Virus record (IMG/VR): IMGVR_UViG_3300042350_004191
Span: 146,587 to 210,586 of that record
Direction: 5' to 3' (one strand)
DNA: 64,000 nt
How positions within the stretch are numbered: position 1 is the stretch's first letter; each line of letters opens with the position of its first letter. Below the pieces are notes generated by a model. The model did not search any database, was not told where the DNA came from, and worked only from the letters and a program-made list of their open reading frames with translations. The translations under genes and the position numbers were made by a program. Positions 45,384-63,962 of this stretch are shown in pieces.

Positions 45384-45395
45384 GATCTTTGACAA
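45384..45395 (+). promoter_or_regulatory. boxA-like antitermination element
   Basis: GATCTTTGACAA just 5' of the structured RNA and tRNA-Ser. Confidence 0.55.
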
Positions 45396-45403
45396 AAAAA
45401 ATC

Positions 45404-45735
45404 ACGATTCGGTAGCAGTTCATTACCGAATCAGGATAACAATCTTTTCTTGTTGGTGCGTTGGGAAAGTTATCCGAGCTAGGGGAGCCAAGCTGCGTTA
45501 AGCTATGATCCTATGCATTGATACAACACAAGATATGGACGAAGTTGTGTTCTGCGTATCGCGGAGCCTTCGTTGAGTGATAGGACAAATTCTAGGATAA
45601 AACCTATCAAAACCAACATTTGGGTTAATTCTGTAAATGGAGCCGACATGAGTATAAGGGTGATCTTAAGCAGTCTTATATCTCCACATACGAGTGGTTG
45701 GAATTAGTCCTGAATCGTCGCGGGTAAACGATTCA
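45404..45735 (+). ncRNA. Unidentified structured non-coding RNA (~330 nt)
   Basis: No long ORF, GC-richer than flanks, many complementary pairs (GATTCGGTA/TACCGAATC, GGATAAC/GTTATCC, TGTTGGT/ACCAACA, TGATAGG/CCTATCA, GAATCGT/ACGATTC). Confidence 0.75.
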
Positions 45736-45743
45736 ATTTTTTA

Positions 45744-45828
45744 GGAAGCGTACTCAAGCGGCTTAAGAGAACTGTCTACTAAACAGTCGAACAGAAATGT
45801 TCCGTGAGTTCGAATCTCACCGCTTCCG
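45744..45828 (+). tRNA. tRNA-Ser (anticodon ACT)
   Basis: Acceptor GGAAGCG/CGCTTCC, anticodon arm ACTGT-CTACTAA-ACAGT, long variable arm GAACA-GAAA-TGTTC, T-loop TTCGAAT, discriminator G. Confidence 0.92.
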
Positions 45829-51468: not shown

Positions 51469-51540
51469 AGCCCCTGTAGAGATTTGCGCTCTACTCTCCC
51501 GATTACAAATCGGGTGCATCGCTATCTATGCTTCAAGGGC
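51469..51540 (-). tRNA. tRNA-Thr (TGT) with non-canonical T-loop
   Basis: GCCCTTG/CAGGGGC, CCCGA-TTTGTAA-TCGGG, T-arm TAGAG-CGCAAAT-CTCTA. Confidence 0.8.
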
Positions 51541-57560: not shown

Positions 57561-57631
57561 CTGGCTCGCATAGACTCGAACTATGAATAAGAGATCCAAA
57601 TTCTCTGGTGTTACCATTACACTACGAGCCA
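57561..57631 (-). tRNA. tRNA-Gln (TTG)
   Basis: TGGCTCG/CGAGCCA, AGAGA-ATTTGGA-TCTCT, TTCGAGT. Confidence 0.9.
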
Positions 57632-57667
57632 TCATCTTTACTAATTTATCATTTAATCAGTAAAATA

Positions 57668-57856
57668 TCAATTTTTCTTTTTTCTGCTTTTAAGCCATGG
57701 TGTTTTAAACTTCATTGTCCAATCAATTACTGCTCTTGCAAAACCAATATCATATCCCGCTTTTTCGGATTCGTACCACTTATGTTTCATGATTTCTTCT
57801 TTCATTGCTATGAATTCTTTGTATAAAGAAGTATTTGCCACGTTCACTATATTCAT
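57668..57856 (-). CDS. Small DUF4032-like protein
   Basis: EEIMKHKWYESEKAGYDIGF..A..DW motif; start moved to MNIVNV. Confidence 0.7.
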   Translation of the reverse strand: MNIVNVANTSLYKEFIAMKEEIMKHKWYESEKAGYDIGFARAVIDWTMKFKTPWLKSRKKKN

Positions 57857-57866
57857 ATTTATCTTT

Positions 57867-58880
57867 TTAAATGTTTGTCTGATCACCAGAAAAAATAATA
57901 TCATTTGGTTTTAATCCATTAATATTTTGATTAACCAAATCTTTTTTAATAATATCTTTTAATTGATCAAAGGAACCTGCTTCCAATGATGTTTCATAAA
58001 AATTATTAATTCGAAATATTCCTACTTTTTCAAATACATCACATTTGTTGATGATTACTTTGGTCGCACCTGAAAGATTTACAGCCTTATTTAATCTTCC
58101 AAAGTTTAACCAATTCACAAGTCTTTTTCTACCTGTGGTAGAACCAAACTCTTGACCAAGTTCAATTAATTGGTTGAGTTTTTCATCATTCCAAAGACAT
58201 TCTGGAAACAATGGATCGACACCACTTTTGGTATCATAAATTTTTGCTACACCGATAATGTCACGAATTTTCTTCGGTGAAAATCCAAGTGAACACGCAT
58301 TATGGGGAAATGTTTCAGAACTTGTTACATAAGGATAATTTCCATAGTTAACATCCAACCATATGCTTTGAGCACCTTCACAAAGAATTTTTCCTTCTAG
58401 TTTTCCATCCCAAAGAAAGTCTTTTAATGGATTAAAATTTGCTTTGCTAATCTGAATGCCAACACGATTTGCTTTGTCTGCATAACAAGGGGCAATACCC
58501 TGACCAGTAGTTCCAAGTTTAGGTTTCAGATGTTTCAGATCATATTCGATATGTGCATCTGTGATCACATGAACATTTGGATGAACTTTTACCAAAGACG
58601 TATCAAAACCATTTTGTTTTAAGTATTCAATTTCTTTGAGAAATTTATCGACATTCAAAACACAGTTTGGACCGATAACAGATTTTTTTCCGTGAAAAAC
58701 ACCAGAAGGAATCAGATGAGTTTTATATTTTTTCCCATCAAGATAAACAGTATGACCAGCATTTGGTCCACCATTCCAGCGACAGACCATATCATAGTCT
58801 TTCGCCATTGCGCTTGAAATTTTACCCTTGCCTTCATCCCCCCAAGCAAGACCGACAATTACATCAACATGTTTAATCAT
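57867..58880 (-). CDS. purA: Adenylosuccinate synthetase (short form)
   Basis: WGDEGKGKI, GGPNAGHT, GTTGQGI.P, EGAQ..LDV..G.YPYVTSS, TTGRKR. Confidence 0.95.
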   Translation of the reverse strand: MIKHVDVIVGLAWGDEGKGKISSAMAKDYDMVCRWNGGPNAGHTVYLDGKKYKTHLIPSGVFHGKKSVIGPNCVLNVDKFLKEIEYLKQNGFDTSLVKVHPNVHVITDAHIEYDLKHLKPKLGTTGQGIAPCYADKANRVGIQISKANFNPLKDFLWDGKLEGKILCEGAQSIWLDVNYGNYPYVTSSETFPHNACSLGFSPKKIRDIIGVAKIYDTKSGVDPLFPECLWNDEKLNQLIELGQEFGSTTGRKRLVNWLNFGRLNKAVNLSGATKVIINKCDVFEKVGIFRINNFYETSLEAGSFDQLKDIIKKDLVNQNINGLKPNDIIFSGDQTNI

Positions 58881-59145
58881 ATTCATTAAATTTAAACCAA
58901 GCATACACCAAAATACTGCACATAATCAAACCTACAGTATAATTTAAAAACCACCAAAGACCAAAAGTGGTCAAGAACATATAAACCATTCCTGAAATAT
59001 AGCCACCAATAGACATTAAAATTAACATTAAAGAAACATCTTTAGATGATTTATTTTTGAATATTTTTACGATTTGTGGAATATAACAAAGCATAAAAAA
59101 CAGCATCATCAATATTCCGAAGAATTCTGCTAAAATAGTTTTCAT
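58873..59145 (-). CDS. SemiSWEET / PQ-loop family transporter
   Basis: 90 aa, three hydrophobic helices, YIPQIVKIFKNKSSKDVS. Confidence 0.85.
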   Translation of the reverse strand: MKTILAEFFGILMMLFFMLCYIPQIVKIFKNKSSKDVSLMLILMSIGGYISGMVYMFLTTFGLWWFLNYTVGLIMCSILVYAWFKFNEYD

Positions 59146-59416: not shown

Positions 59417-59980
59417 TTATTTTTGGCGTTGGTTAATAGGTTGATAAATTTTTAATTTTTTTAATCTTTTTATAACTGCAACATCAGAAGCACCAACTAT
59501 TTTTCCTATTTTAAGATTACTTAATTTTTGAATTACGTGTAAATCATATAAATCAAAATTATCCCATTCGATTTGAGATTTTCTTTTTGCGGCACAAGTT
59601 TTTGAACAAGTTATAAGATAATTTGCTTTTTGCTTATTACAAATTGGACAATATGTTTTTCTTTTTCTTTTTTCTTTTAAATCTACAAATTTTGGAATAT
59701 TTTTTGGGATATTAGTTTTACCCGCATGATATTCTCTGTGACAGTTAGCACACAATAAAACACAATTTTCTAACTCTTTTAATAATAATTTCCATTGTTT
59801 AGGATTGGCTCTTATTCCACCAAAAGATAATGTTTTTTGTGAAGGATCAATATGATGTATATCAAAAGCTTCTTCACATTTATCATAACCACATATACAA
59901 CACTTTCCACCAAATCCCTCAACAATTAAATTTTTAGTATCTTTTCTCCAAGCCTTAACACGATCTGCATTTATACTCAT
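59417..59980 (-). mobile_element. Free-standing HNH endonuclease with zinc fingers
   Basis: CCIC, HHIDP...NCVLLCANCHREYH, CPIC...CSKTC, C-terminal HTH-like end; directly downstream of tRNA-Asn. Confidence 0.85.
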
Positions 59981-60039
59981 ATATAATACTTACATATTAT
60001 ATGTAACATTTTATATAAAGGTTTAGATATTCGTAAAAG

Positions 60040-60113
60040 CTCCTTGGGCTGGATTCGAACCAGCATGATGAACAAATTAACAGTTTGTTGGCTTACCGTT
60101 AGCCCACCAAGGA
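60040..60113 (-). tRNA. tRNA-Asn (GTT)
   Basis: TCCTTGG/CCAAGGA, ACAAA-CTGTTAA-TTTGT, TTCGAAT. Confidence 0.93.
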
Positions 60114-60119
60114 ATTAAA

Positions 60120-60815
60120 TTTTCGGCTGTTTTTATCCGCCATCATTTTCTTATCCAGAATCAAGCGGGACTCCCTATCTTTTCAGACGAGTCAACTGAC
60201 GCACACCGTATGCGAGTCATGGCAACTATCCCCCTTATTGCTGTAACGAACAGCTTCTATTCATCAGTGGGTTCTGACTAGAATCTCGTTAGGATTCTCG
60301 GATTAATTATGAGACGGAAGATCGTGAGGAAGTGGCACTTTAGGCTATGTGCCTAACGCCGAACCAACAGCCGAAGCACCGCATCTTCACCCTTTCGGTT
60401 AACACGGTTTGTATTTCTACAACGTCTCAAAAATTGGTGTTTTTGTCGCAAACGGGACCAGACTGATGATTAAGTTGCGCCTTAATCGGCTGGCTTCTGG
60501 TTGGCAATATGCCAACATCAGAAAAACACAGAACCCTTATACAAGGGTTTTAGGTACTATCGACCTTTGGCTTTTTCCTTACCCAGAACCTACACTCTTC
60601 TTTTTTGACTCTCATTAGTAGTCTTATTCACTGTGGAACTCTATATGTCTGCCAGAACACGGACACGTATCCGTTACATAGAGAGGTAGAGTTGCATACC
60701 TTTTTATAAACCAATCCATTTATTACAGAGTTGTTAATTGGTTAGATCTTTCTCTGACCTGACGGGTTTCTCGGCAGGGTTTGTTTGATGTCGGCTAATC
60801 ACCCCGACACCAAAG
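60120..60815 (-). ncRNA. Large (~700 nt) ornate structured ncRNA, GOLLD/ROOL-class candidate
   Basis: GC-richer, no credible ORF, many hairpins and long-range complementary pairs, promoter plus boxA upstream, tRNA 6 nt downstream. Confidence 0.8.
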
Positions 60816-60822
60816 ATTAAAA

Positions 60823-60868
60823 TTTTCAAAGAACTAATATATCTTATCAGAAACTGAAAAAGAGTCAA
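60823..60868 (-). promoter_or_regulatory. sigma70-type promoter plus boxA-like element for the ncRNA-tRNA transcript
   Basis: TTGACT (60863-60868), TGnTAAGAT (-10 at 60841-60846), GTTCTTTGAAAA (60823-60834). Confidence 0.7.
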
Positions 60869-60916
60869 TAAATATTATCGGTGAAATATTATTTTTTAGC
60901 TTTTTTCTTTTGGTAT

Positions 60917-61141
60917 TTATTGTTTAGACTTTTCTTTTAACTTTTGATATTCTTCGTAATACCAATCTCTCTGATCTACTAGTTCCCAAAAATCTTTCAT
61001 ATTTAACTCTACAAGCTTTTCACACATTGTAAGTTCTTTTCTTAAATCAAGGTTAACCTTCTTGTACAATTCTAAATCCTCTTTAAGACGTTCATAGTCT
61101 TTAAGAATAAAGTCTTTATATTGTTCATCGATCATACCCAT
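60917..61141 (-). CDS. Coiled-coil hypothetical protein
   Basis: 74 aa, heptad pattern. Confidence 0.6.
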   Translation of the reverse strand: MGMIDEQYKDFILKDYERLKEDLELYKKVNLDLRKELTMCEKLVELNMKDFWELVDQRDWYYEEYQKLKEKSKQ

Positions 61142-63731: not shown

Positions 63732-63962
63732 TCATTCTTCGTTCTCTTCCACTACAATCGGCACATCAGTCCAATGCGGCTTTCCACATTCAAGGCATCG
63801 CACCCCTTGCTGAAGTGTGTCTTGATAGTATACTCCACCGCTATTGAGTTTACCCCCAACCGCCTTGCGAACCCAACGCAAACCAGCGAATACGCCGCCT
63901 GTGACGCAATAATGCTTACCCATGGTTACTGTATCTCCTGTAACAATGTAATCTTGACTCAT
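63732..63962 (-). CDS. Small zinc-ribbon-like hypothetical protein
   Basis: HYC...CLECG. Confidence 0.55.
   Translation of the reverse strand: MSQDYIVTGDTVTMGKHYCVTGGVFAGLRWVRKAVGGKLNSGGVYYQDTLQQGVRCLECGKPHWTDVPIVVEENEE

What the first reader, a model, noticed from the sequence alone, without database searches (positions are those of the whole stretch)
60120..60815. ~700-nt ornate non-coding RNA fused to tRNA-Asn
Seen (transcribed on -): an 11-bp 5' hairpin (60784-60794/60804-60814) and many local hairpins (GTTGGC/GCCAAC, GATTAAG/CTTAATC, AGAATC/GATTCT, GCTGT/ACAGC). At least four long-range pairs: 10 bp 60122-60131/60366-60375, 8 bp 60269-60276/60529-60536, 8 bp 60261-60268/60462-60469 and 7 bp 60310-60316/60423-60429. 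Also an overlapping TAGGC/GCCTA plus GGCAC/GTGCC pseudoknot-like element and GNRA loops. It has its own promoter and boxA and ends 6 nt before the tRNA. Known: GOLLD and ROOL RNAs are of this size, occur beside phage tRNAs and have unknown function. Inference: a GOLLD/ROOL-class or new giant RNA whose 3' end would be freed by RNase P cleavage of the tRNA. It is the strongest candidate for an undescribed system here, especially paired with the 330-nt RNA.
Basis: partly seen in the sequence, partly recalled or inferred. Interest (0 to 1): 0.85.

Follow-up and report, generated by a model that had tools for sequence, protein, structure and literature searches.

The report
New large structured phage RNA family
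The stretch encodes a real, large, intricately folded non-coding RNA that sits in front of a tRNA gene in an uncultivated jumbo phage. It founds a previously undescribed RNA family of the same general kind as the enigmatic GOLLD and ROOL phage RNAs, but it is not a member of either.

Summary
Window 60114-60840 (- strand) is a genuine structured non-coding RNA gene. It is an ORF-free island of 41-49% G+C in a ~30% G+C genome, and it lies behind a sigma-70 promoter.

I found about 16 distinct homologs, forming six clades, on 27 viral and metagenome contigs. All that can be placed belong to one lineage of uncultivated T4-like jumbo myoviruses. None turned up in cultured phages or in cellular genomes with the searches run.

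Covariation strongly supports a conserved core of about 270 nt, with helices I call P3 to P9. Between 92.6% and 95.4% of cells are paired, against 24-49% when partners are slid, and 0 of 500 shuffles reach the observed covariation score.

The "700-nt RNA" is composite:
- a boxA-like 5' motif identical to the rRNA-spacer type;
- clade-specific 5' hairpins;
- the conserved core;
- a 120-nt insertion unique to this phage;
- a 3' domain of about 195 nt found only in this clade.

tRNA-Asn follows with no terminator between. Rfam 15, including GOLLD and ROOL, gives no match even at E<=10 in three clades.

Best reading: a new family of tRNA-island-associated phage RNAs. It is probably transcribed under Nus-factor (boxA) protection, released by RNase P and active in trans. 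Its function is unknown.

The parts
60841..60868 (-). Sigma-70-type promoter: -35 TTGACT, 16-nt spacer, -10 TAAGAT with TG before it.
   Evidence: The same geometry is conserved in relatives: TTGACT/TTGACA, N16-17, then TAAATT, TATATA or TATAAA.
60823..60836 (-). boxA-like motif UAGUUCUUUGAAAA at the predicted 5' end of the transcript.
   Evidence: - Exact match.
- Present in all six clades as G(U/A)UCUUU(G/A)A(A/C/U)A.
- 10 of 11 positions fit the gamma-proteobacterial consensus GYTCTTTAANA (PMC5725501).
- Identical to the start of the Mycoplasma nested-PCR primer GTTCTTTGAAAACTGAAT (PMC3019172), a 16S-23S spacer primer by my own knowledge.
60784..60814 (-). P1, an 11-bp hairpin with a 9-nt loop. 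It is clade-specific.
   Evidence: Four of its pairs change on both sides among clade-A relatives.
60758..60778 (-). P2 hairpin CCUGCCG/CGUCAGG. It is clade-specific.
   Evidence: pair 71/81 changes U-A to C-G.
60709..60743 (-). P2a hairpin AACCAAUU/GGAUUGGUU. The whole hairpin is missing in the L004, L059 and L068 versions.
   Evidence: a whole-hairpin indel.
60684..60701 (-). P3 hairpin AGGUA[UGCAACUC]UACCU. This is the start of the conserved core.
   Evidence: L063 has GGCA/UGCC, one compensatory change. A rival pairing of UAUGCA with J6/7 UGUAUA is only 78.5% paired and shows no covariation (helix 1).
60639..60683 (-). P4 stem CUCUAUGU/ACAUAUAGAG, enclosing inner hairpins (ACGGAU/GUCCGU).
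   Evidence: in helix 3, 6 of 7 pairs change on both sides; in helix 4, 4 of 6. Nine different stems were seen.
60623..60638 (-). J4/5, the conserved single strand UUCCACAGUGAAUAAG.
60607..60623 (-). P5, a variable hairpin (GACU/AGUC here).
   Evidence: a different hairpin sits at the same place in every clade.
60585..60606 (-). An A-rich strand, then the small hairpin AGAGU[GUAG]GUUCU.
   Evidence: helix 5: 100% paired in 14 sequences, with U-G changing to C-G on one side only.
60545..60584 (-). P6 (GGGU/ACCC) enclosing P6a, a 3-bp stem with a 7-nt loop at 60553-60565.
   Evidence: - P6 is CCGGGU/ACCCGG in L065, CUGAGU/ACUCAG in L070 and AGGU/ACCU in L063.
- P6a has five Watson-Crick variants.
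-, helix 7: 3 of 4 pairs change on both sides.
60437..60536 (-). The P7 domain:
- long-range helix GUGUU (60525-60529) with AACAC (60437-60441);
- P8 (60497-60521);
- P9 (60458-60493), capped by the invariant hexaloop GCGCAA (60475-60480);
- the invariant strand UGCGACAAAAACACC.
   Evidence: -: RNAalifold on clade D/E alone gives this fold.
- 95.4% of cells are paired, and P8 changes on both sides in 7 of 7 pairs.
- Ten different P8 stems were seen.
60429..60436 (-). U-rich tail AAUUUUUG that ends the conserved core.
   Evidence: Its possible partners are the leader just after boxA or the A-rich J5/6 strand. This is undecided (note 5).
60310..60429 (-). A self-contained structured insertion, closed by GAGACG(U)/(A)CGUCUC. 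It is unique to this phage.
   Evidence: - Absent from all relatives.
- No other copy in the window or in any locus held (L001-L100).
- It folds on its own at -39.5 kcal/mol.
60114..60309 (-). 3' domain with five or six hairpins. It is found only in clade A.
   Evidence: -: 85-95% identical in clade A, with compensatory changes at pairs 637/643 and 702/707.
- Absent from clades B to F.
60039..60113 (-). tRNA-Asn(GUU), with no terminator between it and the RNA.

Best explanation
This is the gene of a large structured non-coding RNA. It is the first described member of a family confined, as far as I could search, to one lineage of uncultivated AT-rich T4-like jumbo myoviruses.

**Shown**
- A near-consensus sigma-70 promoter.
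- A conserved boxA-like motif at the start of the transcript.
- A conserved core of about 270 nt, helices P3 to P9, whose helices covary.
- Clade-specific 5' hairpins and 3' extensions.
- A position inside tRNA islands, often directly in front of a tRNA.

**Inferred mechanism**
1. Host RNA polymerase starts at the promoter.
2. The boxA motif recruits NusB/NusE and the other Nus factors, as in rRNA operons. The long untranslated RNA therefore escapes Rho termination and folds co-transcriptionally.
3. Transcription runs on into the tRNA.
4. RNase P cuts at the tRNA 5' end and frees the RNA.
5. The compact RNA then acts in trans during infection as a free-standing RNA or RNP. This is the same niche as GOLLD and ROOL, possibly linked to the phage's translation or tRNA module.

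Its biochemical activity is unknown.
For: **A real RNA gene**
- No ORF, a G+C island, and an MFE z-score of -4.3.
- 27 contigs carry a homolog.
- Whole hairpins are gained and lost between versions.

**Covariation**
- 3' half of the core: 95.4% of cells paired against 78.6% in shuffles and 32-49% when slid. Eleven pairs change on both sides. The score is 0.424 against 0.127, with 0 of 500 shuffles reaching it.
- 5' half of the core: 92.6% against 82.4% in shuffles and 24-40% when slid. Fourteen pairs change on both sides, with 0 of 500 shuffles reaching it.

**Strand**
- The promoter and the tRNA have the same orientation.
- One-sided changes are mostly G-C or A-U to G-U (about 15). Only about 2 are A-C.

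**boxA**
- The motif is conserved in all clades.
- It lies 4-6 nt after the -10 box in clades A, D and E, and 18 nt after a TGTATAAT -10 box in L108. It is therefore transcribed.
- It matches the published consensus and the spacer-primer sequence.
- The only other exact copy in the window heads a second ORF-free RNA-tRNA unit at 45384. A tRNA operon without a long leader has no such motif.

**Acts in trans rather than only in cis**
- The same core is followed by tRNA-Asn (two or more different genes), by tRNA-Met, or by no tRNA at all.
Against: - There are no expression data, and the host is unknown.
- Binding of Nus factors and cleavage by RNase P were not tested.
- In relatives of the second RNA, the boxA-like motif could lie in a promoter spacer (TTGACA-N17-TAAATT). 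A DNA-level role for the motif is therefore not excluded.
- Sense-versus-antisense folding energy hardly differs.
- The family is small and comes from one phage lineage, so relatedness inflates shuffle statistics.
- No tertiary contact or pseudoknot is supported by covariation.
- The 3' domain might be a separate RNA.
Confidence: 0.55

Rival explanations
1. The RNA is only a cis-acting leader or spacer of a phage tRNA operon. On this view it is an rRNA-operon-like transcription unit whose structure serves tRNA expression and processing, and it has no function once cut off.
For: - It is directly fused to a tRNA in clades A and D, with 0-24 nt between them and no terminator.
- The boxA motif and a possible leader-trailer pairing recall rRNA operons (note 5).
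- A second boxA-led RNA precedes tRNA-Ser.
Against: - Clades B, C, E and F keep the core without an adjacent tRNA.
- The tRNA partner differs between clades.
- The tRNA-Gln/Tyr operon works with an 11-nt leader.
- About 270 nt of conserved sequence and structure is far more than processing would need.
Confidence: 0.2
2. The RNA is a decoy that mimics rRNA-operon signals. It would soak up Nus factors, ribosomal proteins or assembly factors and so redirect host rRNA synthesis or translation.
For: - A boxA identical to the rRNA-spacer type sits behind a strong, early-type sigma-70 promoter.
- GUUCU motifs are repeated.
- It is located in the tRNA island.
Against: - This is purely inferential.
- One GUUCU copy is explained as the 3' strand of a small hairpin (helix 5).
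- There is no match to rRNA models at E<=10.
Confidence: 0.1
3. The RNA is a very divergent member of GOLLD or ROOL.
For: It has the same genomic niche: phage-borne, in a tRNA island and large.
Against: - No hit to any Rfam 15 model at the gathering score or at E<=10, in clades A, B and D.
- The conserved part here is 5'-proximal. In GOLLD the 3' region is universally conserved and the 5' region less so.
Confidence: 0.03
4. It is not an RNA gene at all, but a degraded protein gene or a DNA-level element such as an origin or a packaging site.
For: The G+C-rich island could be foreign DNA, and folding energy differs little between the strands.
Against: - Compensatory base-pair changes, including G-U pairs that work on one strand only.
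- Hairpin-sized indels that are not multiples of three.
- A conserved promoter that points into the region.
- No ORF.
Confidence: 0.02

Closest known systems
GOLLD RNA (Rfam RF01998)
   Same: - It is a large, ornate non-coding RNA encoded by phages and prophages.
- It often lies next to or around tRNA genes.
- Its function is unknown.
- It has one conserved half and one variable half.
   Different: - There is no sequence or structure match.
- Here the conserved core is 5' and the variable extension is 3', the reverse of GOLLD.
- Minimal forms are only about 330-370 nt.
- A boxA leader has not been described for GOLLD, as far as I know.
- Oligomerisation is untested here.
ROOL RNA (Rfam RF03087)
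   Same: A phage or prophage RNA near tRNA islands, with a complex multi-helix fold and no known protein partner or function.
   Different: - No match to the Rfam model.
- The helices and conserved strands are different.
- The hosts and habitat differ: these are environmental T4-like jumbo phages.
rRNA operon leader/spacer (boxA, Nus-factor antitermination complex, leader-trailer helix)
   Same: - The same boxA sequence type sits at the start of a long untranslated, highly structured transcript that also carries a tRNA.
- The 5' leader may pair with a 3' tail (note 5).
   Different: - The body is not rRNA: there is no Rfam rRNA hit.
- It is phage-encoded.
- Nus binding is untested.
- No boxB or boxC element was identified.
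Lambda nut site (boxA followed by the boxB hairpin)
   Same: The order is boxA, a short spacer, then a hairpin, at the start of a phage transcript.
   Different: - The hairpin is long, at 11 bp.
- Its sequence and loop are not conserved between clades, or it is absent (clade E).
- No N-like protein was identified.

Membership tests
GOLLD (RF01998) | Match to the family covariance model | tested here: not met
   No hit at the gathering score in the whole window. No hit at E<=10 on window 59900-61000, L071 150-700 or L063 1440-2060.
GOLLD (RF01998) | [quoted passage not shown] | tested here: not met
   Here the conserved core is 5'-proximal, and the 3' extension differs between clades or is missing.
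GOLLD / ROOL | Encoded by phages or prophages, often near tRNA islands | tested here: met
   Phage contigs of 86-212 kb carry it. It is directly upstream of tRNA-Asn or tRNA-Met, or lies inside tRNA clusters, though no tRNA was found in the loci held for L065, L045, L040 and L108.
GOLLD / ROOL | Homo-oligomeric RNA-only nanocage | not testable with these tools
   This needs in vitro transcription with mass photometry or cryo-EM.
ROOL (RF03087) | Match to the family covariance model | tested here: not met
boxA / Nus-factor antitermination site | Sequence fits the boxA consensus | tested here: met
   GTTCTTTGAAA against GYTCTTTAANA gives 10 of 11 (PMC5725501). The 12-mer is identical to the start of the Mycoplasma nested-PCR primer GTTCTTTGAAAACTGAAT, a 16S-23S spacer primer by my own knowledge. 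It is conserved in six clades.
boxA / Nus-factor antitermination site | Lies in the transcript, upstream of a long untranslated RNA | tested here: met
   It lies 4-6 nt after the -10 box in clades A, D and E, and 18 nt after it in L108. It is ambiguous for relatives of the second RNA.
boxA / Nus-factor antitermination site | Binds NusB/NusE and suppresses Rho termination | not testable with these tools
   This needs gel shifts and reporter assays.
Group I/II introns, RNase P RNA, tmRNA, rRNA fragments | Match to the Rfam models | tested here: not met
   No hit at E<=10. ARAGORN finds no tmRNA.
Structured non-coding RNA (generic) | Helices kept by compensatory changes beyond what controls give | tested here: met
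   Both alignments were fitted to a model built from five sequences of clades D and E, which favours the structure. The other clades are independent of that model.

The most novel reading that the evidence does not exclude
This would be a third, independent class of tRNA-island-associated giant phage RNAs after GOLLD and ROOL, forming a defined RNA-only or RNP particle. Its assembly would be driven by hijacking the host's rRNA antitermination and chaperone machinery through a borrowed boxA, so that the phage in effect runs a miniature rRNA-like operon to build its own RNA machine.
Probability: 0.2. Interest if true: 0.85.

Novelty: new variant of a known kind. Interest (0 to 1): 0.64.

Why it matters
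Large, elaborately folded RNAs without a known function are rare. The two phage-borne classes, GOLLD and ROOL, were recently shown to form RNA nanocages.

A third, unrelated family in the same genomic niche would suggest that this niche repeatedly selects for big structured RNAs. It would also give an independent system for asking what such RNAs do.

Two features make it practical to study:
- The minimal forms of about 330-370 nt, in clades D and E, are small enough for SHAPE and cryo-EM.
- The boxA leader gives a concrete, testable link between a phage non-coding RNA and the host Nus/Rho machinery.

The boxA leader also hints that long phage non-coding RNAs need protection from Rho, as rRNA and CRISPR arrays do.

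Tried and rejected
- **Rfam.** I searched at the gathering score and at E<=10 on three clades and on the second RNA. Only tRNAs were found.
- **Cultured phages.** blastn of the window RNA and of the clade D and clade B versions against 50,697 cultured-phage records gave no match.
- **Cellular genomes.** An 18-mer scan of 185,579 species genomes gave 25 hits. None was a homolog by blastn or nhmmer.
- **A 16-mer scan.** AGTGTAGGTTCTGGGT in viral contigs gave 17 extra hits that were chance matches. Three of them lie inside a coding region.
- **Synteny.** L008, whose purA is 62% identical, has no RNA at the syntenic place.
- **A long-range helix.** RNAalifold on four clade-A sequences proposed a 16-bp helix joining P3/P4 to the 3' domain. 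I set it aside as a family feature because clades B to F lack the 3' partner. It may still be a clade-A alternative.
- **A rival to P3.** Pairing of UAUGCA with J6/7 UGUAUA is 78.5% paired with no covariation.
- **RNAalifold on all clades.** On MAFFT alignments of all clades it failed to find P8 and P9, because the variable hairpins were misaligned. It recovered them on clades D and E alone.
- **Strand by folding energy.** Inconclusive.
- **Paralogs.** nhmmer found one copy per locus and no similarity to the second RNA.
- **Possible homologies.** I considered RNase P RNA, 16S and 23S fragments and an anti-Shine-Dalgarno mimic, on the strength of short motif resemblances. I dropped them because the motifs are not collinear or not conserved across clades.
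- **A step I left out.** I did not type long dot-bracket strings into the pair-counting tool. P3 and P6 were therefore judged from sequence tables only.

Full report
**What is in the window**

On the - strand, 60114-60868 holds the following:
- a sigma-70-type promoter, TTGACT-N16-TAAGAT, at 60868-60841;
- the motif UAGUUCUUUGAAAA at 60836-60823;
- about 720 nt without any ORF longer than 69 aa on either strand;
- tRNA-Asn(GUU) at 60113-60039/60040.

G+C is 0.39-0.49 here, against about 0.25-0.33 around it. The - strand folds at -204.9 kcal/mol, with z = -4.3 against dinucleotide shuffles. The + strand gives z = -2.4. No terminator-like site lies between the RNA and the tRNA.

**The genome**

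The window belongs to a 210.6-kb IMG/VR contig. It encodes a tail sheath, a large terminase subunit, a UvsX-like recombinase and a family-B DNA polymerase.

The polymerase is only about 30% identical to T4-like cyanophage gp43. TerL is about 34% identical to its counterpart in rhizobial T4-like phages. This is therefore a distant, uncultivated T4-like jumbo myovirus. Its host is unknown.

**Homologs**

I used the neighbouring purA-like gene and exact DNA words from the RNA to find relatives. They lie on 18 IMG/VR contigs, most of them 86-212 kb long, and on 9 metagenome contigs.

These searches found nothing:
- blastn against 50,697 cultured-phage records;
- an 18-mer scan of 185,579 species genomes, which gave only chance hits.

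There is one copy per locus. About 16 distinct sequences fall into six clades:

| Clade | Members | What follows the core |
|---|---|---|
| A | window, L007, L009, L004, L059, L060, L068, L075 | 3' domain, then tRNA-Asn |
| B | L063 | a different 3' extension of about 110 nt; no adjacent tRNA |
| C | L065, L070 | L065: the same about 110-nt extension as clade B; L070: no such extension seen; no adjacent tRNA |
| D | L071-L074 | tRNA-Met(CAT), directly |
| E | L103 | a new promoter and an ORF |
| F | L108 | no tRNA in the locus |

**Anatomy**

All clades share the leading motif G(U/A)UCUUU(G/A)A(A/C/U)A. It lies 4-6 nt after the -10 box in clades A, D and E. In L108 it lies 18 nt after a TTGCTA-N16-TGTATAAT promoter. 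It is therefore transcribed.

After it come 5' hairpins that differ by clade. The conserved core follows:
- P3 hairpin;
- P4 stem, with clade-specific inner hairpins;
- the strand UUCCAYAGUGAAUAAG;
- variable hairpin P5;
- an A-rich strand;
- the small hairpin AGAGY/GUUCU;
- P6, enclosing the 3-bp P6a;
- the long-range helix P7 (GGUGUU/AACACC), enclosing the variable hairpin P8 and the long hairpin P9 with its invariant RCGCAA hexaloop;
- the invariant strand UGCGAYAAAAACACC;
- a U-rich tail.

In clade D the tRNA starts about 10 nt after that strand.

Clade A adds a 3' domain of about 195 nt (window 60114-60309). The window alone has a further self-contained insertion of about 120 nt (60310-60429) between the core and the 3' domain.

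**Evidence for structure**

RNAalifold on the five clade D and E sequences alone returns P7, P8 and P9 exactly as I had read them by eye. A covariance model built from those five sequences finds all 16 versions. Results for the two halves of the core were:

| Measure | 3' half | 5' half |
|---|---|---|
| Cells paired | 95.4% | 92.6% |
| Paired after shuffling partners | 78.6% | 82.4% |
| Paired when partners are slid | 32-49% | 24-40% |
| Pairs changing on both sides | 11 of 23 | 14 of 33 |
| Covariation score | 0.424 against 0.127 | 0.249 against 0.106 |
| Shuffles reaching the score | 0 of 500 | 0 of 500 |

Per helix:
- All 7 pairs of P8 change on both sides.
- P4 changes on both sides in 6 of 7 pairs.
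- The inner hairpin of P4 does so in 4 of 6 pairs, and P6a in 3 of 4.
- Ten different P8 stems, nine P4 stems and five P6a stems were seen. They are not interchangeable: with another variant's 3' strand only 49-65% of positions pair.

P3 rests on one compensatory change, GGUA/UACC to GGCA/UGCC in L063. P6 rests on CCGGGU/ACCCGG, CUGAGU/ACUCAG and AGGU/ACCU.

Two caveats apply. The sequences are related, and the alignments were fitted to the model.

**Strand**

The promoter and the tRNA both point along the - strand. Among clade-A relatives, one-sided changes are overwhelmingly to or from G-U, with only about two A-C cases. Folding energy alone does not separate the strands.

- The 10-bp pair 60122-60131/60366-60375 has one arm in the unique insertion. 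It cannot belong to the family fold.
- The TAGGC/GCCTA and GGCAC/GTGCC helices are also in the insertion. They compete for the same GGC.
- CAGAACCC (60269-60276), a loop of the 3' domain, is complementary to GGGUUCUG (60529-60536). It is also complementary to GUGUAGGUUCUG upstream.
- ACUGAUGA (60261-60268) is complementary to UCAUCAGU (60462-60469). That sequence is an internal loop of P9 that exists only in clade A, the only clade with the 3' domain.

This co-occurrence is suggestive, but there is no covariation (note 5).

**The boxA reading**

The motif fits 10 of 11 positions of the gamma-proteobacterial consensus GYTCTTTAANA (PMC5725501). It is identical to the first 12 nt of a standard Mycoplasma nested-PCR primer (PMC3019172). 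By my own knowledge that primer lies in the 16S-23S spacer, and its target there is the spacer boxA.

boxA is necessary and sufficient for assembly of the rRNA antitermination complex (PMC10250234).

In the window, the only other exact copy is at 45384-45395 on the + strand. It heads a second, unrelated ORF-free RNA of about 350 nt that ends at tRNA-Ser. That RNA is also conserved in relatives and is also unknown to Rfam. The tRNA-Gln/Tyr operon has only an 11-nt leader and has no such motif.

This fits a role in protecting long untranslated transcripts from Rho. It remains an inference, and in relatives of the second RNA the motif could lie in a promoter spacer.

**How it most likely works**

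Transcription would start at a strong host-type promoter and proceed under boxA-dependent Nus modification. It would read into the tRNA, RNase P would release the RNA, and the folded RNA would act in trans.

The same core is followed by different tRNAs or by none. This argues that it is more than a tRNA leader.

Rival readings are scored in the report sections:
- a purely cis-acting leader;
- a decoy for Nus factors or ribosomal proteins;
- a divergent GOLLD or ROOL;
- not an RNA gene at all.

**Comparison with known families**

GOLLD and ROOL are phage and prophage RNAs near tRNA islands, of unknown function, that form nanocages (bioRxiv 10.1101/2024.12.08.627333). This RNA shares that niche.

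It fails the membership test for both. No covariance-model match appears even at E<=10 in three clades. Its conserved part is 5'-proximal, whereas in GOLLD the 3' region is the conserved one.

Seven literature searches found no description of it. I therefore file it as a new family of a known kind.

**Verdict**

Novelty is moderate to high and the function is open.

Noticed in passing
window 45384-45743 (+), tRNA-Ser at 45744-45828: A second boxA-led (GATCTTTGACAA), ORF-free RNA of about 350 nt.
- It has an 11-bp 5' hairpin.
- It ends in the hairpin GAAUCGU/ACGAUUC plus a run of six U, directly before tRNA-Ser.
- The 5' hairpin contains the same ACGAUUC as the 3' hairpin, so the two could be alternative pairings.
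- It is conserved in L004, L007 and L009.
- It has no Rfam match and is not homologous to the main RNA.

   Followed up: partly
window 45744-45828 (+): ARAGORN gives this tRNA-Ser the anticodon ACU, which is unusual for bacteria and phages. The same tRNA is present in L004 and L009.
   Followed up: no
window 51469-51540 (-): A tRNA found by the Rfam tRNA model (45.9 bits) but not by ARAGORN. It lies next to tRNA-Met, and its anticodon loop reads UUUGUAA.
   Followed up: no
window 59417-59980 (-): An HNH endonuclease gene lies directly after tRNA-Asn. It is present in the window and in the L004 group. It is absent from L007 and L009, which also carry a different tRNA-Asn sequence. This looks like a mobile homing-type gene linked to a tRNA replacement.
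   Followed up: partly
L074 476-732 (-): This is a mosaic RNA. The core and its tRNA-Met are of clade D, but the P4 stem and its inner hairpins are those of clade A. This implies recombination between RNA variants of different phages.
   Followed up: partly
window about 62935, 63160 and 63516 (-): Three small ORFs in tandem all start with the same ATGAAATACAGAATTAAAGAA (MKYRIKE...). They form a small paralogous gene family.
   Followed up: no
window about 63740-63960 (-): A short ORF with 0.44-0.49 G+C in a genome of about 0.30 G+C. It may have been acquired recently.
   Followed up: no
window 57867-59145 (-): A short adenylosuccinate-synthetase-like gene (345 aa) and a 90-aa PQ-loop membrane protein. 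The PQ-loop protein recurs near the RNA in clade E (L103 7736-8002).
   Followed up: no
L068 2574-2661 (-): The tRNA-Asn after this clade-A RNA is 88 nt long and has an insertion. It is a third distinct tRNA-Asn gene at the same position.
   Followed up: no
window 57631-57680 (-): The tRNA-Gln/tRNA-Tyr pair has a TTGATA-N17-TAAATT promoter only 11 nt upstream and no boxA-like motif. It served as an internal contrast to the two RNA-tRNA units.
   Followed up: yes
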